The translations under genes and the position numbers were made by a program. Positions 24,801-41,737 of a stretch of 64,000 nt of DNA are shown one piece after another. The stretch lies in sequence record MN091626.1. One strand, given 5' to 3'. Below the pieces are notes generated by a model. The model did not search any database. It was not told the origin of the DNA and was given only the letters and a program-made list of their open reading frames with translations. How positions within the stretch are numbered: position 1 is the first letter of the stretch; each line of letters starts with the position of its first letter.

Positions 24801-25020
24801 CCAATTTGAATTAAATGATGATGAAACTCGTTCAATTATGGGTACAGAGTTGAATGCTTATCTTACTCGTTATGTATCTAACCGTAGCTGTGAAACTATT
24901 CAAGCTGAAGTTAGTGCAGATGAATACGATAAATCTCAACGTATTGTACGTGTTAAAATTTCTGTTAAATTCAACAATGTTATTGAACGTATCTTCATTG
25001 ACATTAATGTTGAAAAATAA
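21868..25020 (+). CDS. Contractile tail sheath protein
   Basis: 1050 aa; N-term 'EEEFIFKYGEPN...YGQAAY...WLRSGG.AYVLRV'; C-term 'FPIAGPRRG', 'RVKISVKFNNVIERIFIDINV'. Confidence 0.88.
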   Translation: MADFMYLHPSVQTQINSYQNNYPTAEGPVTLFAADTFEKGKDGVIDFVGTEEEFIFKYGEPNYTKYGQAAYNLVNWLRSGGQAYVLRVLPKNATYSHAILNVQSRVQKDGKKVLTDANELVKIDDVKIRPTIAFVKKNNRNIEELVNEITLDRGNEQTVDGYNNNFLLLAYPNGRGESYNDLGIRLTLNTSYDTSGRTERVYNLEVLEFDEFSNVNVIDGPFLVTFDPDSISDTGESMFIEEVVNRYSKYVNIKFNLENFQNLAKEINPNVHPASIDVISGKSKVSIDGTPETFYSEKTKQSEDIHITLHRYNNKGVPVTISGNPVLNKPDFNDPVENALISLDNGMREKTFVTDSDRLSYMRDQYKTLRSDNFTEFKSLLNKIIVPGNGLFEDDAGSLPKTIKDNLVSAKLTQEDVTADINDEEAVEEELAGKFKPSEINFGGKPAGAAERLVQDYNTYFEDSNEENLSAVLSGTEEIGSLLLNEFLDNGNKLNAAYELVYKSNSGISSNPKYQADVKELRDVLAQKDQIRIFGIQHKSNILDITNDIAELRIGMKSVTNLEGMSKVLNDTETELRYVIDNLMPAVREGLPKEAVDFINTVPDGDDEDTERDLVSPEAMLNSLADKQMLVDDINLGLMEDNAANREEVFVACNEIANQLVDLINRAVSVASVYKVARAVRIAANTIYYDISIFRKNIDEMIQTRSNYTERDITLNAHQNIELAVANLNKANSKYFNTNLIDVSSPVKFLFGSDGDFSYAEDISYKDRKNSVNRELIKAYKGLIDEEITNTKAYPFDVVLDARYSNEVKFAISELAKNVRKDFVFLADTVTDRYPVSPEDAIRWRKEEFAVSSEYTAIYSQDLTYYDEYTGRDIRFTPTYRLASMIPYQAVNSGLHFPIAGPRRGLVEGHKALSWAPNEPYKEKLYTSKINYIEKDIDRTKFGAQMTSIKSDGPLSNLNNIFTLNQIKRDAETLVSDYQFELNDDETRSIMGTELNAYLTRYVSNRSCETIQAEVSADEYDKSQRIVRVKISVKFNNVIERIFIDINVEK

Positions 25021-25028
25021 TTAAACTT

Positions 25029-25062
25029 ATAGGATACGGCTTAATATACAGTCGTATCCTAT
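25029..25062 (+). terminator. Hairpin/terminator between sheath and tube
   Basis: ataggatacggct / agtcgtatcctat followed by ttt. Confidence 0.7.
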
Positions 25063-25173
25063 TTTATTATATAAATAAAGATCTTATATTAAATTATACG
25101 TATGAAGATGGTATATAAACTTCTATAATATACATTTATGTAAATAAGATTAATGAAAAGGAGAAAATAATAT

Positions 25174-25980
25174 ATGATTTTACCAAGTAAAAATCAGCGT
25201 GTGTTTGATAATAACATCGCTAAGAACAAGTGGTTCTATAATGGACATATGAATCTTCAAACTCTTGAGTTTGATCCATTCGTAACTGGTTATTCATTCA
25301 TAGTATGGACTAAGATTCCTTCTTGGGTTGAAAAACAATTCCCTGGTTTTAAAGCTATGACTCAAAAGAACTTTAAATCATTCCAAGGTTTAGAAAACAT
25401 TGAAATGACTACAAACGATTATATGCATACGTTTAACGGTAATAACTATCGTACAGCTGCTAGTATTACAAAAGGAAACACTGGTTTCCAAATGACTCAC
25501 CAAGAATTCTCTGGTAGTCCAATTAAAAATATGTATCAATACTGGGTATCTGGTATCCGTGATCCTCGTACTGGTATTGCAACTTATCCTAAAATTCATA
25601 ATTTAGAATATGCTGCTAAAAACCATACAGGTGAATTATTATATATTCAAACTCGTCCAGATGCTAATAATACATCTAAAAATAATATTGAATTCGCTGC
25701 TTATTACACTGCAGTAATACCTACTCGTATTTCTCTTGATCACCATAACTACACTATGGAAACTCATGAAGAAGCACAAATTGAGCAAGACTTTGCAGGT
25801 AATATGGAAATTTCAGCACGTGTAAATGACTTTGCTAAGTCTAAACTTAATGAAATTTACAGCTTCACTGAACAAGGTATGTTTGATCCATCTGCACCTA
25901 AAACTGCTGGAGATAACTTATCTGATTTCGACTATAATAAAGGTGGAATCACTGGTTCAGGTAACGGAGATCTTAAATAA
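25174..25980 (+). CDS. Tail tube protein
   Basis: Directly downstream of sheath, high-expression codons, 268 aa, 'HQEFSGSPI...YWVSGIRDP'. Confidence 0.75.
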   Translation: MILPSKNQRVFDNNIAKNKWFYNGHMNLQTLEFDPFVTGYSFIVWTKIPSWVEKQFPGFKAMTQKNFKSFQGLENIEMTTNDYMHTFNGNNYRTAASITKGNTGFQMTHQEFSGSPIKNMYQYWVSGIRDPRTGIATYPKIHNLEYAAKNHTGELLYIQTRPDANNTSKNNIEFAAYYTAVIPTRISLDHHNYTMETHEEAQIEQDFAGNMEISARVNDFAKSKLNEIYSFTEQGMFDPSAPKTAGDNLSDFDYNKGGITGSGNGDLK

Positions 25981-25999
25981 TAGATTCTCTCAAATAAAA

Positions 26000-26031
26000 T
26001 CCCCTAATACTAAATTAATAGTATTAGGGGA
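26000..26031. terminator. Bidirectional terminator
   Basis: tcccctaatacta / tagtattagggga between convergent genes. Confidence 0.85.
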
Positions 26032-26042
26032 ATATTTTTGAA

Positions 26043-28208: not shown

Positions 28209-28238
28209 TGTAATAACTCAACTCTCTTCTATAATATT

Positions 28239-29741: not shown

Positions 29742-29765
29742 TTCCTTTTCATTTCAGAAATAATA

Positions 29766-29805
29766 TATGCGGATATGACATATAATAAACTGTCATATCC
29801 GCATA
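29766..29805 (-). terminator. Hairpin/terminator after 29856-35735
   Basis: tatgcggatatgaca / tgtcatatccgcata, 15-bp stem. Confidence 0.7.
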
Positions 29806-29855
29806 ATCTTTACTATATAAAAGAGTTGTTCTTCTATTTATTCAAATCATTAACT

Positions 29856-32800
29856 TTATTTACCTGAAAATACTGGTATAGCAGATCTCACATCAATGTT
29901 GAATTGATCTCCATAAGCTCTATTAATAGCTTCTTGAAGATCAGAATCTCCTTGTGAAGGTCCATTATTATTACCTGGATTGATAATAATAGTACTTCCG
30001 TTTCCATTATTACCACCTGTACCAGGATTATATGGATCATTAGGATTAACAATGACATTACCATTATTATTACCATTAGCTCCATTGTTTCCATTTTGTC
30101 CATTATTTCCAGTATTGCCGTTGCTACCATTATTTCCATTTGCACCGTTAATAATATCTGGGTTATTTTGTAAATTATCTTTAATGATTTTATCAATTTC
30201 TTTATTAATTTCTTTGATAATTACATTACCTTTAGAATCAACTAAGTCACCTTTATTATTGATAGTTGTGTTATTAAAGATATTATCACCTTTATTAATA
30301 GTAGTGTTATTACCTTTAAATGACATTTTTCTAAGCTGATCTAACATCTTAGCTGTATTCTTATCAATATTACTTGTATGCTTAGTAATTTCATCTAAAT
30401 CCATACGTTTTTGCTTATCAACTTTCATAGGTCCATTTTTGTAAGATACTGTAGAATTGTTATAATTATTGGTAATATTATAAATATTTCTTACAGTATT
30501 ATTATCGCCTTGAATTGTTTGATGAGTAGTAGAATTGTTGGTTGTAGTTCCTGGTGAAGTATAGTTATTATTAACTATAGTAGAATTAGTATTTCCACCA
30601 TTATTAATTACAGTACTTCCACCAGAAGAACTTCCTGATCCTTGTTGTTGAGATTGATTTGGCATTGATGAAGATGACCCATCTTGACCATTTGCACCAG
30701 ATTGACCATCAGAACCACTAGATCCTGATGAACCTGAAGAACCAGAGTCTCCTGATTCACCATCTTCTCCATCAGATCCTGATGATCCGGATTCAGATTT
30801 CTTCTTACCGGCTTCAGATTTAAGCTTTTCTTGTTGTTCTTGGTCTATTTTTTTGGCTTCTTCGTAATCAATACCATATATTTGAGCGTAACGTTTCATT
30901 AAACGGTCATTTAATGCTTCTTGTTCTTCTTCATCCATACGGTTATCGTCACGTCCAGTAATGGATCCGTACCAAGTACCATTTTTGAAACTATATTCTG
31001 AAGCTCCTGGTGAATCTCCTGATTCTGAACTTTCATCACTTGAGCTTCCGCTATCAGAACCTCCTTCACCATATCTCATATAACCATCAATTCCCCATTT
31101 AGGGTTTTTATATTTATTAGCACTGTTAATAACAACACCATCAACACCATTAGCCTCTACTTGTTTACCTCCACCAATGTACATTGTAACGTGTTCTATA
31201 TTATCACATAAAATAATGTCACCTGGTTTAAGGTCTTTGGGGCTTTTAGCTTTAATTTTCTTAAAAGGCGTATCTCCATTCCAGAATGAATGAGTAGTGG
31301 CGTTCTTATCCATATCTAAACCAGCTTTTACATAAGCTCTAGCTATCAAACTAGAACAGTCAAAAGAATTAGCTCCTTGTCTGTTAGGTTGTGAATATTT
31401 TGCACCAACCTGTTTCTTAGCCCATGCAACAGCTTTATCAATTTTGGCTTTTTGACTTCCGCCACCGCCACCGCCTCTTTGTATAGGTGGATTACCTTTA
31501 ATTATTCCTGTTCTACGTGAGCTTTTGTTTTTTCCTGATGTAGATGAAACCATGTTAGAAAATTTACTAATATCATTTGTATCAGCTATAACTGAACCGG
31601 CCCCACCTCCGCCAGCTCCTCCACCTTTTTTCTTAGTAGATTTTTTACCAGAACCACTGAATTGTTTGATAAAAGCATTACCAGAAGAAATACGTGACCC
31701 TAAAGCAGGAACGCCAGCTCTTTCATATTTACTTACCCAAGAAGCAGCTGCCTGTTCTACTGTTTTAGTAGTTTTAAGGTGAGATAAGGCAGCACTTTCT
31801 GATCCACTTAATTCTTTCCATAAATAATCTAATTGTAAGTCTAAATCAGACCATTTTTTACCTTTTTCTTTAGCATATTTCATTAAACCTTGTCTACGAG
31901 TATTATCCCATTGAGCAATACCAATACCATAACCAGAAATAGCACTATTAGCTTTTGCTTCATCAAATTTGGCATCTCCTTGAACACGATCAGCTTTCAT
32001 TCCAGATTCATGTGCAAAGTTACCTAAAACACCAGCAGTTTGTTCATCAGAAAGTCCTTTATCTTTAAGGAAATTCCAAATTTTCTCTGCACCTTCACCT
32101 TCAATTCCGGCTGCATCACTTCCTGAAGATGATGCTGAACTTGATGAAGATGATCCAGAGCCAGCCATAAAACCAGCCATGATATCATTCATCATTCCTC
32201 CGAGCTTGTCAAACCAGTCTCCAATAGTGTTAACTACTTCTCCACCTGGTTCATTTATATCTAATTTAGATTTTTTCTTTTTCTTCTTACTTAGTAGAGA
32301 ATAAAAAGGAGACATACGCATCATAGTTTCTGCTAATTTCTTAGGAGCCTTTTTAAGTTTACTCATAAGATTTTTAGGCATTAATTTATTCATTTGATGA
32401 CCAATTCTACCCATTACTGATAATGGTGAATTTTTCATAGCTCCGTCTACATCTTTTTTAATGTCGTCTCTAGTTTTTCCTGCTGATTCTTCTACTTGTT
32501 TCTTAGCATCTTTGTTAGCTTTATCTGACATTCCATTCATTTCAGCTATTTCTTTTTTAGCTCTATCAGATGCTTCACTTTCAATTCCTTCTTGATATGA
32601 GCTTAATTCTTCTTTACTAGCTTCAGTCATTTCTTTACTCATATTTCCCATTTCTTCTTCATGACTAGAGAATTTGTCTTTTAACCATCCCCAACCAGAT
32701 TTAATTAATCCAGTTCCTCCTTGAAGAAGCATAGAAGTCATACCAGTTAAATTACTTAAGCCTTTACCGGCTAATGCTAAAGGAGCCATCATTAACATAG

Positions 32801-35735
32801 AAGCACCACCGACAACTTTTTTAATCAACCCACCAAAGCCACTTGATTTTTCTTCCATAGCCATATCAGTTTGATCTCCAAAGCTTTTAGCCATACCTGT
32901 AGTTTTCTGAACCATGTTCATACCTAAACCAAATGCTGGTTTTACAATTGATTTATATAATCCCATTCCAGCTAATCCTAATAAAGGAGTAGAAGCTAAT
33001 AAAGGATTATCTTTAATAAAACCGCCTATAATTGAAGATTTATCTACAGAACCATCCATTTTAGTATCAACTGAAGGATCAACTGCAAAATTTTCTCCAC
33101 CAGGTTGAGTTGAATCTAATTTCTCTTGTTCTTTTTTAGTTTTAGAAGGATGATCATTGAATCCAATAATGCTACCTAATGTTTTAATTGGATGTTTTAA
33201 TGATTCTATAGGATGAGTTATTGTTCTAATAATATCTGGTCCAGCTAATGCCAATGATGCAATTTGTCCAATACCAGGTATAGCATTTACTCCAACACGA
33301 GCACCTACTTTAGCTCCTGCTTTAAGTAATCCTTTACCTACAGCTTTTTTAGCACCTTTTCCAGCAGCCATTTTAGCAGCTCTAGCTTTAAGTTTTCCTT
33401 TAAGTCTACTACCTGCACCAGCCATTAAAGCACCACTAGCAGCAAATTTGCCAGTTAAAGAACCACCCATGCTAGTTACTTTACCACCTAATTTAGTATT
33501 AGATAATTTACCTATTTTTTCTTTAACAAGATCTTTACCTTTGTTTTTATATTTATCAAATTTTTCTTTGAGATGTTTATTACCCTCAATAAAATCTTGA
33601 GCTTCTCCTACTTTATCTGCAAAATCTTTATCATCTGAATTGTCAGAAGATTTAGCTTGTCCATTTTCTAAAGTTTGTTCATTAGGAATAATAGTAGATC
33701 TATTATCTTCATCTTTAATATTATCATTTCTTGTATTATCAGATTTTCTACTTTGATTTGTATTAGAAGATGCTGTAGAAGTATTTTTATTTAAAGTTTG
33801 CTCTCTAGGATCTATTTCTCTAGAAACATTATCATTAGGTTGATTCACATCACTAATTATACCACTTGAATTACTGTCACTAGAATTACTGTTATATCTT
33901 TTCTCAGGTATTTTGCTATTTATTCTAGATACAATTTGTTTAATTTCACTTATATCTTTATTAACGATATTGAAGTTAATATTATCGTATACTGCATCTT
34001 TATTAGTGCTAAGAATACCACTTCCATTTTCATTATTTAATTTAGAAGTAATATTTTTAGAAGTACCTTTTCTTTTATTTTCATCATTAAGAGCATTTAT
34101 AGAACTACTAGATAGTTTCTTCTTAATATCTTTAGATTCTTTATTTAATTGCATTCTAGTTTTAGTTAAACTAGTTTTAGCTTCTTTATCATTAAATAAT
34201 TTATCTAGGAGAATATTAAATGGATCATTCGGGTCATTTGATTTAACCTGATCAAGTTCATTGCTTTTATTAATATTTTTAGAAATAATTTCTTTAATCT
34301 TAGATGTAGCTTTATTTTTGTTATCTTCATTACTGAAAAGATCAATTCCCATTTCAGAAGCTATATTTTCAAATTCTTTAGTAAAACTAGATTCCTTGAT
34401 AGTTTTATTAACTTTTTCTTCTATATCATCTTTAATTGACTTAGAAGTTTTAAATGAACCTGAATCATAGTCATAATGAATTTCTTGCCCATCTTCTGAA
34501 GTTAAACCAACTATTTTAGATAAATAACCAGGTATAACTGTATTAAGTGTATTATGAGTTTCTACATCAAAAGCAACTTTCTGATGTCTATCTTTTCTGT
34601 TAGCAGTTGATATACCACCATTTACACTATCAAATATTTTATCAATTAATTTACTTTTACCTGATTTAACATCCTCAAGAAGATCATCTCTTCTTTTATC
34701 TCTTTTTCTTTGTTTAGTACCATCGTCATTATCTTTACCAAAAGGAATAATTTTTTTATTGGCAAATTTACCAACTGCTTTTTCTATGAAAGTATTTTCA
34801 TTATTAAGAAAATCAAAAGCTTTACCTTTAGCTACATCAACTAAACCTAAATTTTTAATCCCTTGCTTTTTAGAACCGATAACTTCTTTAAGCAATTCAG
34901 TTCCTTGTTTTTTAATAAAGTCTTTAGCTTTATCTTTGAATCCTTCTTCTTGAGATCCTTCTAATATATTTGATAAAGTTATATTAGATAGGAATAAATC
35001 TTCTAATGAATTACTATTTTTAATTTCAGATATATTCTTAATTTTAGTATTATGTCTAATAGCATTACTAGTTTGAATTAAACCATTTAAGTTCTGGAAC
35101 ATACTTTCTCTAATACTATCATTAGCTTCTCTCATTAAATTAAGATTATCAATCATAGAAGTAAACCCAGTAGTATTTATTTGAGAAAGATTAGATACAG
35201 AAGAAGTTAATAGAGCTGTAGATTTAGCAGAAGAACCGCCATCATTAATAACTGTTGTAGAAGATACTATTTTAGATTTGTTATCTTCTTCTCCGTCAAA
35301 GTCATCAAATTCAAAATCTCCATCTAAAGAATCATCTGTGTCAGAATCCATATCTGAAAAACTATCATCAAAACCAAAATCTTCAAAATCACCACCGATA
35401 TCCATACCCATGTTATTGAAGTCTTTTAGTGATCCTTTATCTTGGATAGTTTCTCCAGTTTTAAAGGTATTTTTAGTAGATTCTAAAGCTTCTTTAGATA
35501 AATCTTTAGTAGATTCACTTATCTTTTGTAATTGTTTTTTCTTTTTATTCTTTAATTCTTTGACAGCTTTTAATGGATTATTTTGATCCATCATACGTTT
35601 CATGTCATTAGACTTCATTTTATTTAAATTTTTGTTAAATTCAATATCTATATATTTTCTAGAAGATTTAGAGGAGGAGTTATTTCTAAACTCCTTCTCT
35701 ATCTTGCTAGTGTTAAATTTCTTATCTCTAGCCAA
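29856..35735 (-). CDS. Giant tail-associated protein with phage tail lysozyme and NlpC/P60 domains
   Basis: 'KIWNFLKDKGLSDEQTAGVLGNFAHES...GIGIAQW' (~31660-32100); 'SFDCSSLI...PGDII...EHVTMYIG' (~31073-31445); Gly/Ala/Lys-rich tape-measure-like tracts; Asn/Gly-rich tail. Confidence 0.85.
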   Translation of the reverse strand: MARDKKFNTSKIEKEFRNNSSSKSSRKYIDIEFNKNLNKMKSNDMKRMMDQNNPLKAVKELKNKKKKQLQKISESTKDLSKEALESTKNTFKTGETIQDKGSLKDFNNMGMDIGGDFEDFGFDDSFSDMDSDTDDSLDGDFEFDDFDGEEDNKSKIVSSTTVINDGGSSAKSTALLTSSVSNLSQINTTGFTSMIDNLNLMREANDSIRESMFQNLNGLIQTSNAIRHNTKIKNISEIKNSNSLEDLFLSNITLSNILEGSQEEGFKDKAKDFIKKQGTELLKEVIGSKKQGIKNLGLVDVAKGKAFDFLNNENTFIEKAVGKFANKKIIPFGKDNDDGTKQRKRDKRRDDLLEDVKSGKSKLIDKIFDSVNGGISTANRKDRHQKVAFDVETHNTLNTVIPGYLSKIVGLTSEDGQEIHYDYDSGSFKTSKSIKDDIEEKVNKTIKESSFTKEFENIASEMGIDLFSNEDNKNKATSKIKEIISKNINKSNELDQVKSNDPNDPFNILLDKLFNDKEAKTSLTKTRMQLNKESKDIKKKLSSSSINALNDENKRKGTSKNITSKLNNENGSGILSTNKDAVYDNINFNIVNKDISEIKQIVSRINSKIPEKRYNSNSSDSNSSGIISDVNQPNDNVSREIDPREQTLNKNTSTASSNTNQSRKSDNTRNDNIKDEDNRSTIIPNEQTLENGQAKSSDNSDDKDFADKVGEAQDFIEGNKHLKEKFDKYKNKGKDLVKEKIGKLSNTKLGGKVTSMGGSLTGKFAASGALMAGAGSRLKGKLKARAAKMAAGKGAKKAVGKGLLKAGAKVGARVGVNAIPGIGQIASLALAGPDIIRTITHPIESLKHPIKTLGSIIGFNDHPSKTKKEQEKLDSTQPGGENFAVDPSVDTKMDGSVDKSSIIGGFIKDNPLLASTPLLGLAGMGLYKSIVKPAFGLGMNMVQKTTGMAKSFGDQTDMAMEEKSSGFGGLIKKVVGGASMLMMAPLALAGKGLSNLTGMTSMLLQGGTGLIKSGWGWLKDKFSSHEEEMGNMSKEMTEASKEELSSYQEGIESEASDRAKKEIAEMNGMSDKANKDAKKQVEESAGKTRDDIKKDVDGAMKNSPLSVMGRIGHQMNKLMPKNLMSKLKKAPKKLAETMMRMSPFYSLLSKKKKKKSKLDINEPGGEVVNTIGDWFDKLGGMMNDIMAGFMAGSGSSSSSSASSSGSDAAGIEGEGAEKIWNFLKDKGLSDEQTAGVLGNFAHESGMKADRVQGDAKFDEAKANSAISGYGIGIAQWDNTRRQGLMKYAKEKGKKWSDLDLQLDYLWKELSGSESAALSHLKTTKTVEQAAASWVSKYERAGVPALGSRISSGNAFIKQFSGSGKKSTKKKGGGAGGGGAGSVIADTNDISKFSNMVSSTSGKNKSSRRTGIIKGNPPIQRGGGGGGSQKAKIDKAVAWAKKQVGAKYSQPNRQGANSFDCSSLIARAYVKAGLDMDKNATTHSFWNGDTPFKKIKAKSPKDLKPGDIILCDNIEHVTMYIGGGKQVEANGVDGVVINSANKYKNPKWGIDGYMRYGEGGSDSGSSSDESSESGDSPGASEYSFKNGTWYGSITGRDDNRMDEEEQEALNDRLMKRYAQIYGIDYEEAKKIDQEQQEKLKSEAGKKKSESGSSGSDGEDGESGDSGSSGSSGSSGSDGQSGANGQDGSSSSMPNQSQQQGSGSSSGGSTVINNGGNTNSTIVNNNYTSPGTTTNNSTTHQTIQGDNNTVRNIYNITNNYNNSTVSYKNGPMKVDKQKRMDLDEITKHTSNIDKNTAKMLDQLRKMSFKGNNTTINKGDNIFNNTTINNKGDLVDSKGNVIIKEINKEIDKIIKDNLQNNPDIINGANGNNGSNGNTGNNGQNGNNGANGNNNGNVIVNPNDPYNPGTGGNNGNGSTIIINPGNNNGPSQGDSDLQEAINRAYGDQFNIDVRSAIPVFSGK

Positions 35736-35758
35736 TTATTAGTTCCACCTCCTGCTAT

Positions 35759-38700
35759 CTATTTCAATTCTTCTAATAAACGGTCTAATTCTTTAGTAGA
35801 TGCTAATGTATTTTTATCTATATTAGCTAACATTCTTACTAAATCATCTGAATACCATAATTTTTCATAATCATAAGTATAACCAGAGTTACCATTTTCA
35901 ATTTTAGAATTTTTATGATTGTTTACAATTTTATTATAATGGTTAGTTACTCGGTTTTTACCTTTTATAAATTCTTTATTCACATTTTCATTATTAATGA
36001 CATTACTTTGTCCATTTTGATAATTGTTATTAACTGTTTTAGTATTTTTACTACCTTGATTGTTAACAGCATTATTACCTCTATTAATATTAGAAAAACC
36101 ACTATTAGCTAATGTTGGTAATTGGAATACCGGAGGATTTCCGATATTCTTATTATTAGTTATTTGAGATCTTGATTCTTGTGGTTTAGATGGCGATGCT
36201 GAAGAATCAGAACTATCTGAAGATTCTTCATCTCCAGAATCTTCACTTCCAGATCCTGATGAACCTGATCCGGATTCAGATTTCTTCTTACCGGCTTCAG
36301 ATTTTTTCTTTTCTTGTTGTTCTTGATCGATCTTTTTAGCTTCTTCATAGTCAATACCGTATATCTGAGCATAACGTTTCATTAATCTATCATTTAATTC
36401 TTCTTGCTCGTCTTCATCCATACGGTTATCATCACGACCAGTTATTGAACCATACCAAGTACCATTTTTGAAACTATATTCTGAAGCTCCTGGACCTGAT
36501 TCACTATTTCCTTCTTTATCATCTTCATCACTTTTAGAAGCAGAAGAACTAGATCCTCCTCCGCCAATAGTCTCTTTAATTGTACTTGCTAAAGCTTTCT
36601 TACCTTTACTATTCGGATGAACACCTAAACCATCATTTTCAATCATATCAGAACTGGCTTTACTATTCCAGTCTATTACTTTTGAATCTGAACTTTCAAT
36701 AGCTTTATTAGTTGCTTCAATAATATCAGAAATATCAGATCCTTTTCTCTTTTCAGGATCTACATACGTATTAACAAAGTATACATCTGCTTTGTCATAC
36801 ATATCTTCTATTTCTTTAACATTACCTGTAGTTAATCCTCCATTAGTACCTAATTGCACTATAATTGCATTTTTATCTTTATTGTATTTCTTTTTGTTGG
36901 ATTCTAATACATTTTTACCATTAGGCGAAGGACCTCCACTTGAATAAGTTCTTGAAGGAACTGCATTAATTTGAATTTTACTAACTGATTTTCTTATTTC
37001 AGAAGCAGCTCCTGCACCTATGGAGTCACCTACCATAAATACTTTATTGTAGGATTTACCTCCACCGCCTCCACCAGTTACCGTTTTAGCTATTTTTCTA
37101 ATGGCTTCAGGAGTATTACTGAATGGAAATCTATCTTTAATAAAATTATCAACTCGTTTTTTAATCTTCTTAATATTGTATATATCTGAATTGTAAATCT
37201 TAGTTTTTTCTTTTTCTGCCTTTTCTTCAGTTTTCTTCTGATTATTTTCTAATTTATTTAAAAGAGCTCTATCATTTCTTACTTCTTTAGCTCTTTGTCT
37301 TTTAGCTTCTTTGACTTCTTGTGATTTATAACCACCGTCTACCATTTTTACAGTAGGATCAAATGCAGCTCCACCTTTTTTACCTTTTTTAGATTTTCCA
37401 GCTTTACTACCTTTGTCTTCATCACTACCGCCTTTAGAACCTTTTAAAGGAGCTTTAATCCAAGGTGATGGATCTACAGAGTTTTTCTCCATAGCCCAAC
37501 CGCCTGGTTTACCTTTATTTATTTGGAAGTGAAGGTGACCTGAACCAGCAGTATTAGCACCAGTGTTACCTGAGATTGCTATAACTTGTCCAATTTTAAC
37601 TTTATCGCCCTTTTTAACTAATTGTTTAGTTAAATGCATATACGTACTATAGATGTTACCAGGTGATTTAACTTGAACAATATTACCTCCACCCGGATCG
37701 GTGTTTGATCTAATAACTGTACCTTCTACCATACATTTAACTTTTTGACCTGGAAGCATACCTATATCAATACCATAGTGCTTTCCTCCGTTAAATGATA
37801 AACCAGAATAGTTACCATATGGTTGCCAAATCGCAGCACTTGGTATTTTTTTCATCCAAGCACCAACTGTGCCATCTGGTATTTGATTAATAGAACCAGG
37901 TACAATTTTCTTAGTATTCATATCTACTTCGCCAGCTTCACCTGAAACTTCAGGTTCACCGTCTCCACCAGAATCGCCACCACTGGAATTTTTCATTTTA
38001 GACATTGCAACAACCATTTCTTCCATTTTAACTAAGAAACGACTGAACCAATCTCCGATTTCTCCTTTACCATATTTAGAGAAATCAATTCCGCCTTTAG
38101 CTATTTGATACAAACTACCTAGAGGTGTACTCATGAACATATCTTTTTGAATATCTTCTTCAGCTTTTGGTCCTGATTTCATTTTATTATCAGTAATTGT
38201 TTTAAACATATCTCCACCAACTTTAGCTAGTGGGAACATAGGAGATGCTCTAAACATTAGTTTAGAAGTACTTAATATTAATCTACCTAAACCTGTTTGA
38301 TCTTCAGTATGTTTTTCTTCTTTACTTTTAGCTTCATCTTCTATTTTATCACCAGGATGTTCACCAATTCCGAAGAAACTACCTAATGTTTTAATTGGAT
38401 GTTTTAATGATTCTATAGGATGTTTAATAGTTTTAATGATATCAGGAGCCCACATTGCTGCACCAATTACTGGTCCAACAAATGGTATGAATGGTAAGGC
38501 TGTTTTCAAACCTGCTTTTAATGCAAATTTTCCTCCAGCTTTCATTGCACCTTTACCAAATAATTTATTTTTAGCTTTACCTATAGCACCAAAAGCTTTT
38601 CCTCCAAGTTTCTTAGCTCCACCGAATAAACCTTTACCGATAGATTTAGCTCTGTTAAAACCTTTAGAAGCAAATTTACTTATTCCTTTAGTTGCAGCTG

Positions 38701-41700
38701 AAGCATTCTTTTTATTAAATATTTTAGATATACCACTTTTAGCTACTTTTCCTATAGTTTTACCGGCACTTAATCCTTTTTTAACTAATCCTGCACCTTT
38801 ACCTATAACCATTTTACCTAAAGATTTAACAGAAGGTAATTTATCTTTAGCAAATTTTCCAATACCTTTAAATACATTACCTATTTTTTTAGGAGCACCT
38901 TTAATACCTCTAAATAATTTTCCTAATCCAAATTTTCCAGCTATATTTTTAATTCCGCCACCTATTTTACCTAACATGCCAGGCATACTAGTAAAGAATT
39001 TACCTATTCCGCTTGGTAATAATTTAGATAATAATTTAGGTCCAAATTTAGCAGCTAAGAATCCTCCAGCACCCAACATTGCAGCGTTACCTAAGAATCC
39101 TCCAGCAGATGCTAAGAATCCTTTCTTACCAGGTTCTAGATCTTTTTTACCATTTTTACCTTTCATTAATGAACCTAATACAGCTGCAGAAGTTCCAGCA
39201 AATAAAACTGGTCCCATTTTACTAAAATCAAGCATACCATTCATCATTTTTTTAGCACCAATGGATTTTTCAGCTTCTCCACCTTTTCCAAAGTTTATAT
39301 TACCTCTAATGGATTCAGCAATTTCTTTTTTATTGGAACCTGTTATTTTAGACATAACATCTTCCCCAGATTTTCCTGCATCGGCAGTTGAAAGGCCTTG
39401 TTTCATTCTTTCTAAAGCTCCAGCATCTTGAGAATCTTTCATATCTTTTTTAATAGTTGGATCATTGCCAAAAGCAGTTTTAACTAAATCGATTATTGTA
39501 CTCTTAGCTTTCTTTTCTTTTTCCTCTCTAGTTAAATCATCTATCGTTTTGCTTGGTTCTTTAGTGTAAGCATTTTTATTAGCTTCATTATTATTAATTG
39601 ATAATTTATTTAAACCAGGAATATTCTTCATTAAATCCATTAATGGATTATTATCTATAATACTAGATTGATTTATATTCTGATAAGGATATTCATCATC
39701 TTGATCTGGTTGAGTATTTTCTTGAGTTGAATTAACTCTACTAGATGCAGGAGAAACCATATCTTTAATAGCACTTGTAGGGTTTTCTTTGTATTCTTTA
39801 GCTTTATTAACTGCATTAGAAAGACTATTTAATTTATCCATTACAGAAGCATGAGCTTCATTACTTCCATTATTTCCACTTAGAATAGGGAAATTTTTAC
39901 CTTTATCTATGATACTATTGATTGTATTAACTTTATTATTAATAAATTCTTTATTATTATTAATATTATCATTACTGAAATTATTGTCTAATTTTCTTTC
40001 TATTTCTAAGAAAATATTTTTAATTTCTTCTAAATCACTATTTTCCCAGTTAATATTACCAAAATCTTTAATCTGATTAATATTATCATTATTATTAGAT
40101 CTAGAATAAGTCGAATTAGATTTATTTAAACCTTCTATTTCAGTAAATGCCATTATTCTTGAATTATCTTTTTTATCAAGTGTTTTTGAAATAGATTTCT
40201 TAATATTGAATAAATCAGTATTAAATTTAGCTGAATTCTTTTCAAACACTTCAGATAATGACTCAGTATTAACATTTATATTTTTCTGATTAACTATTTC
40301 TTTAAGTTTAGAAGTTTTTTGGATAGGTTTGTCTATTTTAGTTAATTCAGCTAAAACTTCTTTAGTTCTTTCTTCATCATTATCTAATTTAGATAATAAT
40401 TCTTTACCTAAATAAGTATCTTTAAAATTAAATAAAGAATCTGATTTAATCTTATCCAAGTCTTTTTTCTTAGCCGAACCTCGATTTTCCCAAACGCCTT
40501 TTCGGTAATTATAGATACTACCTAATTCAGCATTATCTGCTAATCCGCCTGAACGACCTTCTTTTTTGGCTATCAAATTACCTTGAAGTCTAGATAAGAA
40601 GTCTGGTATAACTTTATTAATAGACGTATGAGATTCCATATCAAATTGAACAGGAGTATCTTTTTTACGTTTATTTTTTAGAGAAATACCTCCTTTACCA
40701 TCACCTAATAACTCTTCTTTAAATTGATCTAATCTACCTGAAAGAGCATTTCCTAAATTAGATATATACTTATTATCATTGCCAGTTAATCTTTCTAAAC
40801 CTTTAGTAAGTTTACTATCTTCATCAAGATTTCTATTAATAAGCATAGAACCTATATTTTGTGGATCAAATCTTTTATTCAATCTATTAAATATATTTTT
40901 ATTGTCGCCTTCAGGATCATAACCACCAATATCACCGTAAAGAAGTTTATTAAATGCAATTTTAGCTCCTTGAGTTGCAGCAAATTCAATAGGATTTTTA
41001 GCTACACCCATCAGCATTGATTTAAGTTGGTCTCCGGACATCATACCCATTAATAAATTTTCAGGATTAGTTTTCTCATCCAAATATTTTAATAAACTAA
41101 TATTACCATTCAATATAGAATGTAATTTACTTTGTTTATTTCTTTTGGTATTTTCTTCCATTATTGTATTTTGATATATACCATCTTGTATTGTACTTAA
41201 ATTTGATAAAGCTGAATCTACGAGACTGTTAGTTGCTTGCATTGATAAAGAATAATTATTCAGTGCAATATTTGTTCCAACAAATCCTCTTTGATTTATC
41301 TCAGCTAAATTATTCATTGCTACTAGAGGTGAATTTGTTATTTTAGATTTCTTTTTATCTGATAAACTAACAATTTCAGATTTAGTCCCATCAGGATTAT
41401 CAATATATTCTGTTACTGATTCATATTCAGGTTTTTCATTAGATAATTTTTCATTACTACTTGAAAAAAGATCATTTTCATTAGATTTATTTTTTAGTGT
41501 TTTTAATAAATCATTAGTAGAACCTTTAACTTCAGAAAATTTCTTTAATCTTCTTTCATCATTGTTGAATAATTTTAAACCTGAATCTCCCACTATAGCA
41601 TCTAATGATGGATTAGATTTTATAAACGCATTAAAAAGAATACGACCAGTATTTTTAGAAGCATTTTTAATGACAGTTGATTTATTGTTATTTTCTAATT

Positions 41701-41737
41701 GTCTAATATTCTTTTTATTTTTATTATTTTTAGCCAA
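35759..41737 (-). CDS. Giant tail-associated protein with M23 peptidase and OatA-like SGNH domains
   Basis: 'HYGIDIG...YMHL...HLHFQI' (~37450-37830); 'MVGDS...VQLGTNG...IDW...DGLGVHP' (~36567-37050); late promoter AACA-TATATG-TA at 41782-41771. Confidence 0.85.
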   Translation of the reverse strand: MAKNNKNKKNIRQLENNNKSTVIKNASKNTGRILFNAFIKSNPSLDAIVGDSGLKLFNNDERRLKKFSEVKGSTNDLLKTLKNKSNENDLFSSSNEKLSNEKPEYESVTEYIDNPDGTKSEIVSLSDKKKSKITNSPLVAMNNLAEINQRGFVGTNIALNNYSLSMQATNSLVDSALSNLSTIQDGIYQNTIMEENTKRNKQSKLHSILNGNISLLKYLDEKTNPENLLMGMMSGDQLKSMLMGVAKNPIEFAATQGAKIAFNKLLYGDIGGYDPEGDNKNIFNRLNKRFDPQNIGSMLINRNLDEDSKLTKGLERLTGNDNKYISNLGNALSGRLDQFKEELLGDGKGGISLKNKRKKDTPVQFDMESHTSINKVIPDFLSRLQGNLIAKKEGRSGGLADNAELGSIYNYRKGVWENRGSAKKKDLDKIKSDSLFNFKDTYLGKELLSKLDNDEERTKEVLAELTKIDKPIQKTSKLKEIVNQKNINVNTESLSEVFEKNSAKFNTDLFNIKKSISKTLDKKDNSRIMAFTEIEGLNKSNSTYSRSNNNDNINQIKDFGNINWENSDLEEIKNIFLEIERKLDNNFSNDNINNNKEFINNKVNTINSIIDKGKNFPILSGNNGSNEAHASVMDKLNSLSNAVNKAKEYKENPTSAIKDMVSPASSRVNSTQENTQPDQDDEYPYQNINQSSIIDNNPLMDLMKNIPGLNKLSINNNEANKNAYTKEPSKTIDDLTREEKEKKAKSTIIDLVKTAFGNDPTIKKDMKDSQDAGALERMKQGLSTADAGKSGEDVMSKITGSNKKEIAESIRGNINFGKGGEAEKSIGAKKMMNGMLDFSKMGPVLFAGTSAAVLGSLMKGKNGKKDLEPGKKGFLASAGGFLGNAAMLGAGGFLAAKFGPKLLSKLLPSGIGKFFTSMPGMLGKIGGGIKNIAGKFGLGKLFRGIKGAPKKIGNVFKGIGKFAKDKLPSVKSLGKMVIGKGAGLVKKGLSAGKTIGKVAKSGISKIFNKKNASAATKGISKFASKGFNRAKSIGKGLFGGAKKLGGKAFGAIGKAKNKLFGKGAMKAGGKFALKAGLKTALPFIPFVGPVIGAAMWAPDIIKTIKHPIESLKHPIKTLGSFFGIGEHPGDKIEDEAKSKEEKHTEDQTGLGRLILSTSKLMFRASPMFPLAKVGGDMFKTITDNKMKSGPKAEEDIQKDMFMSTPLGSLYQIAKGGIDFSKYGKGEIGDWFSRFLVKMEEMVVAMSKMKNSSGGDSGGDGEPEVSGEAGEVDMNTKKIVPGSINQIPDGTVGAWMKKIPSAAIWQPYGNYSGLSFNGGKHYGIDIGMLPGQKVKCMVEGTVIRSNTDPGGGNIVQVKSPGNIYSTYMHLTKQLVKKGDKVKIGQVIAISGNTGANTAGSGHLHFQINKGKPGGWAMEKNSVDPSPWIKAPLKGSKGGSDEDKGSKAGKSKKGKKGGAAFDPTVKMVDGGYKSQEVKEAKRQRAKEVRNDRALLNKLENNQKKTEEKAEKEKTKIYNSDIYNIKKIKKRVDNFIKDRFPFSNTPEAIRKIAKTVTGGGGGGKSYNKVFMVGDSIGAGAASEIRKSVSKIQINAVPSRTYSSGGPSPNGKNVLESNKKKYNKDKNAIIVQLGTNGGLTTGNVKEIEDMYDKADVYFVNTYVDPEKRKGSDISDIIEATNKAIESSDSKVIDWNSKASSDMIENDGLGVHPNSKGKKALASTIKETIGGGGSSSSASKSDEDDKEGNSESGPGASEYSFKNGTWYGSITGRDDNRMDEDEQEELNDRLMKRYAQIYGIDYEEAKKIDQEQQEKKKSEAGKKKSESGSGSSGSGSEDSGDEESSDSSDSSASPSKPQESRSQITNNKNIGNPPVFQLPTLANSGFSNINRGNNAVNNQGSKNTKTVNNNYQNGQSNVINNENVNKEFIKGKNRVTNHYNKIVNNHKNSKIENGNSGYTYDYEKLWYSDDLVRMLANIDKNTLASTKELDRLLEELK

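What the first reader, a model, noticed from the sequence alone, without database searches (positions are those of the whole stretch)
36567..37050. OatA-like SGNH domain on a tail protein: candidate virion peptidoglycan de-O-acetylase
Seen: MVGDS, INAVPSRT, IVQLGTNG, DKADVYFVN, VIDW, DGLGVHP, GKKALA. Known (from memory): these parallel the S. aureus OatA catalytic domain (LIGDS, VVELGTNG, GKADIYLVS, LVDW, DGIH, GSKAL), and O-acetylation blocks lysozymes. The DxxH loop has a 2-residue insertion. Inference: a captured host acetyltransferase domain repurposed as an esterase so that the tail lysozyme of the neighbouring paralog can cut; with NlpC/P60 and M23 this gives a four-enzyme wall-breaching kit.
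Basis: partly seen in the sequence, partly recalled or inferred. Interest (0 to 1): 0.75.

Follow-up and report, generated by a model that had tools for sequence, protein, structure and literature searches.

The report
OatA-like esterase domain on phage tail protein
A giant tail protein of a Staphylococcus aureus jumbo phage carries an intact enzyme domain whose closest solved relative is the bacterium's own wall-acetylating enzyme, but it belongs to a sister group that travels with wall-cutting lysozymes and most likely strips acetyl groups from the wall rather than adding them.

Summary
All seven quoted motifs lie on the minus strand at 36557-37060, inside an intact 1992-aa gene (35759-41737). 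The window is 100% identical to Staphylococcus jumbo phage PALS_2.

The "captured host domain" reading is not supported:
- Among 1.84 billion proteins, the nearest relatives (38-45% identity) have no acyltransferase-3 membrane domain.
- 52 of the 86 best relatives fuse this domain to a Phage_lysozyme2 muramidase, often with M23 or CHAP. They sit in type IV secretion loci of Saccharibacteria or in conjugative elements.
- Host-type OatA ranks about 122nd (25% identity).
- The "2-residue insertion" (DGLGVHP) is the signature of the lysozyme-linked clade.

An esterase role that helps a muramidase is therefore plausible by architecture and association, but it is untested.

One fact counts against it being essential. 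In 5 of 10 related S. aureus jumbo phages the serine and histidine positions hold non-catalytic residues, yet the lysozyme, NlpC/P60 and M23 domains are kept.

The published annotations that I read do not mention this domain. I rate it a new variant of a known kind, of moderate interest.

The parts
35759..41737 (-). Giant tail protein gene (1992 aa), annotated 'tape measure protein' in PALS_2, Madawaska and DC4. It carries the M23 and SGNH domains.
   Evidence: ORF, translation. 100% DNA identity to PALS_2 MN091626.1. Madawaska gp087 has the same length. MarsHill tail length of about 233 nm is reported in bioRxiv 10.1101/2020.12.14.422802.
36557..37060 (-). OatA-C-like SGNH domain (residues 1560-1727), the subject of the finding.
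   Evidence: Gly-rich linkers on both sides.
37022..37024 (-). Block I serine codon (Ser1572 in GDS), the predicted nucleophile.
   Evidence: Ser occupies this column in 143/143 non-phage relatives.
36953..36955 (-). Block II position (Ser1595 in PSR), where canonical SGNH enzymes and SaOatA have Gly.
   Evidence: Ser in 54/63 lysozyme-fused relatives, Gly in 12/19 AT3-linked relatives.
36842..36844 (-). Block III asparagine codon (Asn1632 in GTN), predicted oxyanion-hole residue.
   Evidence: Asn in 141/143 relatives. Also kept in all ten phages.
36617..36634 (-). Block V loop D-G-L-G-V-H (Asp1702 to His1707), with Asp five residues before His instead of three.
   Evidence: Asp at H-5 in 28/63 lysozyme-fused relatives. 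Asp at H-3 in 19/19 AT3-linked relatives.
37511..37783 (-). Peptidase_M23 domain (residues 1319-1409) with HxxxD and HxH motifs present.
   Evidence: Pfam 76.9 bits. Motifs.
36293..36493 (-). 67-aa box just after the enzyme cassette, 64/67 aa identical to the paralog's box.
29856..35735 (-). Paralogous giant protein (1959 aa), annotated 'tail lysin' or 'tail lysozyme'.
   Evidence: Paralogy over three scaffold segments.
31659..32090 (-). Phage_lysozyme2 (PF18013) muramidase domain of the paralog (residues 1216-1359).
   Evidence: Pfam 122.8 bits.
31113..31373 (-). NlpC/P60 domain of the paralog (residues 1455-1541).
   Evidence: Pfam 42.9 bits. The Cys-containing motif is visible.
21868..25980 (+). 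Tail sheath (1050 aa) and tail tube genes, which set the tail-module context.
   Evidence: PHROG and Pfam hits.

Best explanation
Residues 1560-1727 of the PALS_2 giant tail protein form a folded SGNH serine-esterase module that looks catalytically competent. It belongs to a clade, sister to the OatA-type (AT3-linked) transferase domains, that is habitually fused to MurNAc-cleaving glycosidases in machines that pierce Gram-positive-type walls.

Proposed mechanism:
1. The protein is carried in the tail as a tape-measure-like chain. The enzyme domains are strung on Gly-rich linkers near its C-terminal end.
2. On tail contraction and ejection it reaches the peptidoglycan layer.
3. There the SGNH module hydrolyses 6-O-acetyl groups on MurNAc. 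These groups are put on by the host's OatA and block lysozymes.
4. The Phage_lysozyme2 domain of the adjacent paralog can then cut the glycan strands, while M23 and NlpC/P60 cut the peptide links.

Shown: domain identity, fold, intact Ser/Asn/His, absence of an acetyl-donor domain, clade membership, co-occurrence with muramidases, and tail-module context.

Inferred: the substrate (O-acetyl-MurNAc), hydrolysis rather than transfer, virion location, and cooperation with the paralog. The help is probably an accessory advantage, not a requirement.
For: (1) The closest solved structures are peptidoglycan O-acetyl-handling SGNH domains: SaOatA-C by sequence and by fold, followed by Cj0610c (a GDSL-family esterase), SpOatA-C and two PatB entries.

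(2) Ser, Asn and His are present. The same columns are nearly invariant in 143 relatives: 143, 141 and 140.

(3) No AT3 domain is attached. In OatA the AT3 domain delivers the acetyl group to the SGNH domain (PMC9487903, read). An extracellular module without it has no evident acetyl donor.

(4) Of the 86 best relatives of 1000 aa or less, Pfam finds Phage_lysozyme2 in 52, SLT/SLT_2 in 6, M23 in 15, CHAP in 12, and Acyl_transf_3 in only 9. In ranks 2-35 nearly all are SGNH followed directly by the lysozyme.

(5) O-acetylation of MurNAc C6 inhibits both lysozymes and lytic transglycosylases (PMC6174289). An esterase is therefore the logical partner of those domains.

(6) Profile and tree tests place the phage domain in the lysozyme-linked clade. 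It carries that clade's DGLGVHP signature. It has Gly at the position four residues after the serine. By my own count on the alignment, that is where SaOatA has the Asp said to restrain hydrolysis (PMC9487903, names no residue number).

(7) Relatives sit in wall-crossing systems. One lies next to PrgI, TraC-like and VirB4-like genes. Others lie between a relaxase and a coupling protein.

(8) The host is S. aureus, whose wall is O-acetylated by OatA (Bera 2005, cited in PMC4876445).
Against: No activity data exist.

Sequence cannot tell an SGNH esterase from a transferase. PatB was first named an esterase and proved to be a transferase (PMC6174289).

The authentic O-acetyl-PG esterase Ape1 is only a weak fold match (rank 38-42, E about 1e-3).

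The acid of the triad is not at the canonical spacing. I could not inspect the model's coordinates, so a working Asp-His pair is unproven.

Five of ten related Staphylococcus jumbo phages (Machias, AH12, PB50, SA1, LY01) have non-catalytic residues at both the Ser and the His positions. They still keep the lysozyme, NlpC/P60 and M23 domains. De-O-acetylation therefore cannot be required for infection of S. aureus by this phage group.

Presence in virions is unverified. The only virion LC-MS I found (DC4, 15 proteins) lists neither giant protein.

Selection on the domain cannot be measured from close relatives: 2 synonymous and 0 amino-acid differences between PALS_2 and Madawaska.
Confidence: 0.5

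Rival explanations
1. The domain is an active esterase, but on another ester of the staphylococcal envelope: O-acetyl groups of capsule, ester substituents of teichoic acids, or membrane lipids met during penetration. It would not act on peptidoglycan.
For: Phage SGNH domains with a shown function deacetylate surface polysaccharides (epsilon15 gp20 petal domain, bioRxiv 10.64898/2026.07.31.742079). Many phage SGNH tail proteins appear in BFVD. S. aureus phi11 and 80alpha Tal proteins also carry SGNH domains of unknown substrate (PMC4876445; PMC7048315).
Against: Those phage SGNH domains are only distant fold matches (13-20% identity, E about 1e-7 or worse), and they sit on fibres, spikes or Tal proteins. 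This domain's nearest structures are peptidoglycan O-acetyl enzymes. Its nearest relatives are fused to peptidoglycan hydrolases, not to receptor-binding or depolymerase domains. Its place on an internal tape-measure-like chain would bring it to the wall, not to the capsule.
Confidence: 0.2
2. The domain works mainly as a non-catalytic wall-binding or spacer module of the giant protein. The intact catalytic residues in PALS_2 would then be a leftover.
For: In five of ten related phages both the Ser and the His positions hold non-catalytic residues. The fold-defining blocks are still conserved there; the block III segment QLG-N-GGL-TG is invariant in all ten. The M23+SGNH cassette still travels as a unit (LY01 mosaic).
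Against: The PALS_2-type domain keeps Ser, Asn and His, which are nearly invariant in 143 cellular relatives. It scores much higher against the active lysozyme-linked profile than the inactive versions do: 143.7 bits against 59-79 bits. The inactive versions diverge faster than the neighbouring M23 (42-56% against 57-88% identity), as expected if they lost a constraint that the PALS_2 type still has.
Confidence: 0.12
3. The domain is a true O-acetyltransferase like OatA-C or PatB and adds acetyl groups to the wall, for example to change it after entry.
For: The closest solved structures are transferases. SGNH similarity has misled annotators before, in the PatB case.
Against: There is no AT3 or MBOAT partner in the protein. 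None turned up among the flanking genes scanned. No acetyl donor is evident outside the membrane. The domain falls outside the AT3-linked clade. It has the DGLGVHP spacing and Gly four residues after the serine, where by my count on the alignment SaOatA has its water-holding Asp. Fusion partners in the clade are hydrolases.
Confidence: 0.05
4. One reading: the domain was recently captured from the S. aureus host's oatA gene.
For: SaOatA-C is the best hit among solved structures, and the host is S. aureus.
Against: The PDB holds few members of this family. In the 1.84-billion-protein search the staphylococcal OatA-type representative ranks 122nd (25% identity, E 7e-5). Lysozyme-fused and conjugative-element proteins reach 38-45% identity at E 1e-21 to 1e-11. 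The tree and profile tests agree.
Confidence: 0.03

Closest known systems
[quoted passage not shown]
   Same: Same fold and size (TM 0.72-0.83). It is the only PDB sequence hit (E 5e-10). It shares block I GDS, block III GTN, the block V His, and the conserved W and G positions.
   Different: The phage domain has no AT3 membrane domain. Its Asp-His spacing is two residues longer. It has Ser instead of Gly in block II. It has Gly four residues after the serine, where by my count on the alignment OatA has its water-coordinating Asp (PMC9487903). It lies in a separate clade. OatA is a transferase; this domain is predicted to be a hydrolase.
SGNH-Phage_lysozyme2-(M23 or CHAP) wall hydrolases encoded next to type IV secretion genes in Candidatus Saccharibacteria, and giant SGNH proteins of conjugative elements (e.g. 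P0005, P0010, P0160, P0154)
   Same: These are the closest sequence relatives (38-45% identity). They share the DGLGVHP signature. They have the same set of partner domains and the same kind of task, getting a macromolecule through a thick wall.
   Different: In those proteins the domains are fused on one 420-780-aa secreted protein, with the SGNH first. In the phage the set is split over two 2000-aa tail proteins, with M23 before SGNH. None of these proteins has been characterised for its SGNH part. The T4SS survey PMC12102498 notes the lysozyme and the peptidase only.
Ape1, the O-acetyl-peptidoglycan esterase of Neisseria and Campylobacter (PDB 4K3U, 8GKD)
   Same: It has the proposed chemistry and the proposed role: removing the 6-O-acetyl group of MurNAc so that glycan-cleaving enzymes can act (PMC6174289). 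It is in the SGNH superfamily.
   Different: It is only a weak fold match (E about 1e-3, TM about 0.5, 10-15% identity). Ape1 chains are 350 aa against 168 here, and Ape1 is periplasmic and housekeeping. The phage domain is not a member of that family.
SGNH domains of other phage tail proteins (phi11 Gp44 and 80alpha gp59 Tal; epsilon15 gp20 petal; Klebsiella prophage receptor-binding proteins)
   Same: These are virion-borne SGNH modules thought or shown to remove acetyl groups from host surface polymers.
   Different: They belong to different SGNH subfamilies (13-20% identity). They sit on Tal, fibre or spike proteins, not on a tape-measure-like chain. The substrates shown so far are O-antigen or capsule, not peptidoglycan.
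Tape measure and tail proteins carrying lytic domains (virion-associated peptidoglycan hydrolases)
   Same: A giant tail protein with M23, beside a paralog with lysozyme and NlpC/P60. Multi-domain virion lysins are typical of phages of Gram-positive hosts (PMC5380687).
   Different: Neither that review nor my paper searches report a peptidoglycan de-O-acetylase among virion-associated enzymes.

Membership tests
SGNH/GDSL hydrolase superfamily | Block I GDS with the nucleophilic Ser | tested here: met
   GDS at residues 1570-1572. The column is Ser in 143/143 relatives.
SGNH/GDSL hydrolase superfamily | Block II Gly (backbone NH of the oxyanion hole) | tested here: not met
   Ser1595 occupies the column, as in 54/63 lysozyme-fused relatives. 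SpOatA also has Ser here (PMC5697884). Only the backbone is used, so function is not excluded.
SGNH/GDSL hydrolase superfamily | Block III GxN Asn | tested here: met
   GTN with Asn1632. Asn in 141/143 relatives.
SGNH/GDSL hydrolase superfamily | Block V DxxH | tested here: inconclusive
   His1707 is present. The nearest Asp is five residues upstream, not three. Coordinates of the model were not available, so the Asp-His contact could not be checked.
SGNH/GDSL hydrolase superfamily | Three-layer alpha/beta/alpha fold with a five-stranded parallel sheet | tested here: met
   AlphaFold model with pLDDT 95.4 and five main strands alternating with helices. 36 PDB matches at E<=1e-3, almost all of them SGNH enzymes.
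SGNH/GDSL hydrolase superfamily | Pfam gathering score for an SGNH model | tested here: not met
   Lipase_GDSL 17.1 bits (cut-off 23.6) and DUF459 15.1 bits (cut-off 27.2). 57/86 relatives match Lipase_GDSL_2 at E<=1e-3.
SGNH-AT3 family (OatA, OafA/B) | SGNH domain fused to an N-terminal Acyl_transf_3 (PF01757) membrane domain | tested here: not met
   No AT3 hit in the 1992-aa protein. The first AT3-linked relative appears at rank 36.
SGNH-AT3 family (OatA, OafA/B) | Groups with AT3-linked SGNH domains in profile and tree comparisons | tested here: not met
   143.7 bits against the lysozyme-linked profile and 106.6 bits against the AT3-linked profile. A neighbour-joining tree puts the phage clade in a 67-leaf group with 49 lysozyme-fused and 0 AT3 members. 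This is a distance tree without support values.
SGNH-AT3 family (OatA, OafA/B) | O-acetyltransferase activity | not testable with these tools
   Needs enzymology.
Lysozyme-linked SGNH clade (unnamed; Saccharibacteria T4SS and conjugative-element wall hydrolases) | D-G-L-G-V-H-P type block V, Ser in block II, Gly four residues after the nucleophile | tested here: met
   PALS_2 has all three.
Lysozyme-linked SGNH clade (unnamed; Saccharibacteria T4SS and conjugative-element wall hydrolases) | Physical fusion to a Phage_lysozyme2 or SLT domain | tested here: not met
   On the phage protein the fused partner is M23. The lysozyme is on the adjacent paralog.
Ape1-type O-acetyl-peptidoglycan esterase | Close sequence or fold relation to Ape1 | tested here: not met
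   Foldseek rank 38-42, E 1.6e-3 to 3e-3, TM about 0.5, 10-15% identity. No sequence hit.
Virion-associated peptidoglycan hydrolase on a tape-measure-like protein | Gene in the tail module that carries wall-hydrolase domains | tested here: met
   Sheath, tube, virion structural and baseplate genes flank it. M23 is on the same chain.
Virion-associated peptidoglycan hydrolase on a tape-measure-like protein | Protein present in the virion | not tested
   The published DC4 LC-MS lists 15 proteins, neither giant protein among them, and it also misses the sheath.

The most novel reading that the evidence does not exclude
The phage domain is one visible member of an unrecognised family of peptidoglycan O-acetylesterases. 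The family would be an evolutionary sister of the OatA transferase domain. It would ride with muramidases and lytic transglycosylases in machines that breach Gram-positive-type walls: jumbo-phage tails, conjugative type IV secretion systems, and the host-attacking T4SS of epibiotic Saccharibacteria. That would supply the 'missing Ape' of the OatA world. It would also show transferase and esterase versions of one fold used on opposite sides of a host-parasite conflict.
Probability: 0.4. Interest if true: 0.75.

Novelty: new variant of a known kind. Interest (0 to 1): 0.55.

Why it matters
O-acetylation of MurNAc by OatA is what makes S. aureus resistant to lysozyme. According to the review read, no Ape-like O-acetyl-peptidoglycan esterase is known to be coupled to OatA.

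A virion-borne esterase of the OatA fold would be a counter-measure to that modification. It would also be a natural example of how small changes in an SGNH active site switch transfer to hydrolysis.

The wider result may matter more than the phage case. The same domain is the standard partner of the Phage_lysozyme2 muramidase in Saccharibacteria T4SS loci and in conjugative elements, where it has gone unremarked.

The inactive versions in half of the related phages offer a natural contrast for asking what the activity is worth.

Tried and rejected
- Plus-strand reading of the given coordinates: only stops.
- First frame guess on the minus strand: wrong frame, then corrected.
- Pfam and NCBIfam on the isolated domain: nothing above threshold.
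- Single-sequence AlphaFold: unusable, pLDDT 38. It was replaced by the MSA run.
- Jones et al. 2020 (PMC7294091) is not held in the library. Its results were taken second-hand from PMC9487903.
It was repeated with 8 sequences. The pattern used came from lysozyme-linked members, so the taxonomic picture (nearly all Saccharibacteria) is biased towards them.
- PLSDB plasmids: no match.
- tblastn of the domain and of the N-terminal 1300 aa against 50,697 phage records: only the ten Staphylococcus jumbo phages. No AR9 or PBS1 counterpart was found at these thresholds.
- Selection test between PALS_2 and Madawaska: too few differences to say anything.
- My local second-round M23 profile gave spurious hits inside SGNH domains. 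Domain counts in this report therefore rest on the curated Pfam run.
- Model coordinates are not exposed to scripts, so catalytic geometry could not be measured.
- The three homologous-protein searches were not used. The exhaustive representative search already answered the question.
Full report
**1. What is at the coordinates**

The plus-strand translation of 36567-37050 is broken by stops. The feature lies on the minus strand, inside the ORF 35759..41737 (1992 aa). It corresponds to residues 1560-1727. It is bracketed by a GGGGGG linker before it and a GGGGSSSS linker after it, so it is a discrete bead on a string.

The gene is intact. No stops or frameshifts are involved anywhere in this finding.

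**2. Where the window comes from**

Window 21868-41737 is 100.0% identical to Staphylococcus phage PALS_2 (MN091626.1, 268.7 kb). It is 96-98.5% identical to phages S6, vB_SauM-UFV_DC4, Madawaska and MarsHill. Five further Staphylococcus jumbo phages (Machias, AH12, PB50, SA1, LY01) match more distantly.

The surrounding genes are:
- a 1050-aa tail sheath and a tail tube protein;
- virion structural proteins and a baseplate wedge;
- ribonucleotide reductase and a RecD/Dda-like helicase.

The gene is annotated 'tape measure protein'. Its downstream paralog 29856..35735(-) is annotated 'tail lysin' or 'tail lysozyme' (bioRxiv 10.1101/2020.12.14.422802; PMC10638138).

Those two papers note the alpha-helical content, transmembrane segments, M23, PF18013 and PF00877. 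Neither mentions an SGNH domain: there were zero occurrences of 'SGNH' in both.

The reported tail length is 233-237 nm. That is compatible with a chain of this size serving as a ruler, but this is my inference.

**3. The two giant proteins are paralogs with different enzyme cassettes**

BLASTP aligns three scaffold segments between them:
- an N-terminal region (29% identity);
- a central PDII..HPIESLKHPIKTLGS segment (45%);
- the C-terminal 240 residues (48%).

Pfam finds Peptidase_M23 (76.9 bits) on the first protein. On the second it finds Phage_lysozyme2 (122.8 bits) and NlpC/P60 (42.9 bits). The M23 HxxxD and HxH motifs are present.

**4. Is it OatA-like?**

Yes.
- phmmer of a 200-aa slice against all PDB sequences returns only two entries, 6WN9 and 6VJP, at E 4.9e-10 and 2.3e-9. 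The alignment runs from block I to the last helix. [quoted passage not shown]
- A single-sequence AlphaFold run failed (pLDDT 38). With a 64-row alignment the model reached pLDDT 95.4 and pTM 0.91.
- Foldseek against the PDB ranks SaOatA-C first (E 1.2e-9 to 3.1e-9, TM 0.72-0.83). Next come the C. jejuni GDSL-family esterase Cj0610c, S. pneumoniae OatA-C, and the PatB entries of C. jejuni and N. gonorrhoeae.
- The genuine O-acetyl-peptidoglycan esterase Ape1 appears only at ranks 38-42 (E about 1e-3, TM about 0.5).

Pfam does not reach threshold on the domain. That probably explains its absence from the annotations.

**5. Who are its real relatives?**

An exhaustive HMMER search of 1.84 billion representative proteins gave 177 hits at E<=1e-3.
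- Rank 1 is the Machias counterpart.
- Ranks 2-35 (38-45% identity, E 1e-21 to 1e-11) are not OatA-like in architecture. Nearly all are proteins of 420-620 aa, with the SGNH domain at about residues 60-240. It is followed immediately by Phage_lysozyme2, and often then by M23 or CHAP/NlpC (Pfam on ten of them; local profiles on all 150).
- The first protein with an acyltransferase-3 domain appears at rank 36.

A curated Pfam scan of the 86 best relatives of 1000 aa or less counted the following:

| Pfam family | Members (of 86) |
|---|---|
| Phage_lysozyme2 | 52 |
| Peptidase_M23 | 15 |
| CHAP | 12 |
| Acyl_transf_3 | 9 |
| SLT or SLT_2 | 6 |
| NlpC/P60 | 2 |
| GH3 | 2 |
| Glucosaminidase | 1 |
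| VanY | 1 |

Gene context of relatives:
- P0005 lies directly after PrgI, TraC-like and VirB4-like ATPase genes.
- The two closest non-phage relatives (P0160 and P0154, 1662 and 1518 aa, SGNH at the N-terminus) lie between an AAA ATPase and a VirD4/TraG coupling protein; a MobL relaxase also lies upstream of P0160.
- A scan of one genome per species returned 41 loci, almost all in Candidatus Saccharibacteria or Patescibacteria MAGs. The search pattern came from lysozyme-linked members, so this distribution is biased.
- A published survey notes that lysozyme and peptidase homologues just downstream of virB4 are essential for epibiotic growth of a Saccharibacterium. It does not mention an SGNH part (PMC12102498).

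**6. Clade test**

I built one profile from the 63 lysozyme-fused domains and one from the 19 AT3-linked domains, with phage sequences excluded. The PALS_2 domain scores 143.7 bits against the first and 106.6 bits against the second.

In a neighbour-joining tree:
- the four phage types form one clade;
- its sisters are the two conjugative-element proteins;
- the group sits in a 67-leaf clade holding 49 lysozyme-fused and no AT3-linked members;
- the AT3-linked domains fall in a separate 40-leaf clade.

This is a distance tree without support values, so it should be repeated properly.

The representative closest to S. aureus OatA (P0122, 181 bits to 6WN9) ranks 122nd against the phage domain (25% identity, E 7e-5). 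The idea that the phage took the domain from its host's oatA is therefore not supported. SaOatA comes first in the PDB searches because the PDB holds hardly any other member of this family.

**7. Active-site reading**

PALS_2 has GDS (Ser1572), GTN (Asn1632) and His1707. Across 143 non-phage relatives these columns are Ser in 143, Asn in 141 and His in 140.

Three features separate the lysozyme-linked clade, PALS_2 included, from the AT3-linked clade:

| Feature | Lysozyme-linked clade | AT3-linked clade |
|---|---|---|
| Nearest Asp upstream of His | H-5 in 28/63, as in D-G-L-G-V-H-P | H-3 in 19/19 |
| Block II position | Ser in 54/63 | Gly in 12/19 |
| Residue four after the nucleophile | Gly in 49/63 | Asp in 6/19, Asn in 5/19 |

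In SaOatA a conserved Asp near the serine holds an ordered water that limits solvent access. Replacing it raised the rate of transfer to water about 3.8-fold (Jones et al. 2020, as summarised in PMC9487903). That summary gives no residue number. That this Asp sits four residues after the serine is my own count on the alignment. On that count PALS_2 has Gly there, which fits a hydrolase but does not prove one.

I could not measure distances in the model because its coordinates are not exposed.

**8. Why an esterase, and why peptidoglycan**

- In OatA the AT3 domain carries the acetyl group across the membrane and acetylates the SGNH domain (PMC9487903). The phage module has no such partner.
- 6-O-acetylation of MurNAc inhibits both lysozymes and lytic transglycosylases (PMC6174289). 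The habitual partners of this SGNH clade are exactly those two enzyme types.
- The host is S. aureus, whose lysozyme resistance rests on OatA (Bera 2005, cited in PMC4876445).

The most economical reading is a peptidoglycan de-O-acetylase that clears the way for the muramidase on the paralog. One caution from the same review applies: PatB was first called an esterase on SGNH similarity and proved to be a transferase.

**9. The main counter-evidence**

Alignment of the ten phage domains shows two groups.
- PALS_2, S6, DC4, Madawaska and MarsHill share an identical, catalytically complete domain (alignment with Madawaska).
- Machias, AH12, PB50, SA1 and LY01 carry non-catalytic residues at both the serine and the histidine positions. 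Two catalytic positions are changed in each, while the block III Asn and the fold-defining blocks are kept.

All of the second group still have M23 on the same protein and Phage_lysozyme2 plus NlpC/P60 on the paralog. Four of the five are recorded with S. aureus as host; SA1 is recorded with S. lentus. So whatever the active domain does, it is not needed for this phage group to infect S. aureus.

Region-by-region identities show two further things:
- The inactive domains diverge faster than the neighbouring M23 (42-56% against 57-88%).
- LY01 is a mosaic. Its N- and C-terminal parts are PALS_2-like (86-93% and 79-80%), but its M23-linker-SGNH cassette is Machias-like. The cassette therefore moves as a unit.

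My notebook records the residue identities at the two changed positions as they stand in the alignments.

**10. What is not known**

- No activity data exist.
- Virion presence is unverified. The DC4 LC-MS lists 15 proteins, neither giant protein among them, and it also misses the sheath. It is therefore too shallow to count against presence.
- Comparison with Madawaska gives 2 synonymous and 0 amino-acid changes in the domain. That is too few to infer selection.

**11. Comparison with what is known, and novelty**

- Virion-associated wall hydrolases on tape-measure or tail proteins are well known (PMC5380687).
- Phage SGNH esterases that deacetylate O-antigen or capsule are known.
- S. aureus siphophage Tal proteins carry an SGNH domain of unknown substrate. 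Those are distant subfamilies (13-20% identity).
- My literature searches found no report of a phage-borne peptidoglycan O-acetylesterase, and none of an SGNH domain on these jumbo-phage proteins. The library is incomplete, so this is absence in what was searched.

I rate the finding a new variant of a known kind. It is a known strategy (virion wall hydrolases plus a deacetylating SGNH) with a new fold subtype, a new predicted substrate and an unremarked clade. Interest is moderate (0.55): the domain call is solid, and the function is plausible but unproven and evidently dispensable in relatives. The wider clade, if it proves to be a family of peptidoglycan O-acetylesterases, would deserve more.

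**12. Verdict**

- Observation: confirmed.
- Interpretation: partly supported. The domain identity, the tail context and the four-domain set are right. The host-capture origin is wrong. The esterase-helps-lysozyme mechanism is the best available hypothesis (confidence about 0.5).

Noticed in passing
window 36293-36493 (-) and 30810-31010 (-): A 67-aa box directly after the enzyme cassette is 64/67 aa identical between the two giant paralogs, although 20 of 67 third codon positions differ (88% nucleotide identity). This looks like purifying selection on a shared motif (docking or processing?) rather than recent gene conversion.
   Followed up: partly
L004 (phage LY01) 2393-8338 compared with window 35759-41737: The LY01 giant protein is a mosaic. 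Its N- and C-terminal parts are 79-93% identical to PALS_2. Its M23-linker-SGNH cassette is Machias-like (M23 is 88% identical to Machias but 55% to PALS_2). The enzyme cassette is exchanged as a unit among these phages.
   Followed up: partly
L002, L003, L004, L009, L010 (Machias, SA1, LY01, AH12, PB50): Five of ten Staphylococcus jumbo phages carry a version of the SGNH domain with non-catalytic residues at both the serine and the histidine positions. The block III segment is still invariant across all ten. This is a natural pseudo-enzyme form whose retained role is unknown.
   Followed up: partly
L005 5078-6919; contig of P0005; L011-L051: SGNH-Phage_lysozyme2-(M23 or CHAP) proteins sit in type IV secretion gene clusters of Candidatus Saccharibacteria/Patescibacteria MAGs, next to a roughly 1000-1100-aa protein with a faint VanY hit. 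The published T4SS survey (PMC12102498) mentions the lysozyme and the peptidase but not the SGNH part.
   Followed up: partly
L054 3668-26468: A metagenomic contig encodes a 4266-aa protein with SLT and this SGNH domain, followed by a protein of at least 3948 aa with M23. This is another tandem pair of giant wall-hydrolase carriers, of unknown element type.
   Followed up: no
L006 and L008 (P0160, P0154): The closest non-phage relatives of the domain are proteins of 1500-1660 aa with no Pfam hit on record. They lie in conjugative-element-like loci of 30-37% GC, between an AAA ATPase and a VirD4/TraG coupling protein. L006 also has a MobL relaxase upstream.
   Followed up: partly
window 38436-39431 (+): A 331-aa ORF lies antisense to the Gly/Lys-rich segment of the giant gene. 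It is most likely a compositional artefact of the repetitive coding strand.
   Followed up: no
window 29856-30900 (-), C-terminal part of the paralog: Collagen-like Gly-X-Y and Asn/Gly-rich repeats lie at the C-terminal end of the tail lysin (Pfam Collagen 27.1 bits, just under the cut-off). The SGNH-bearing paralog has none.
   Followed up: no
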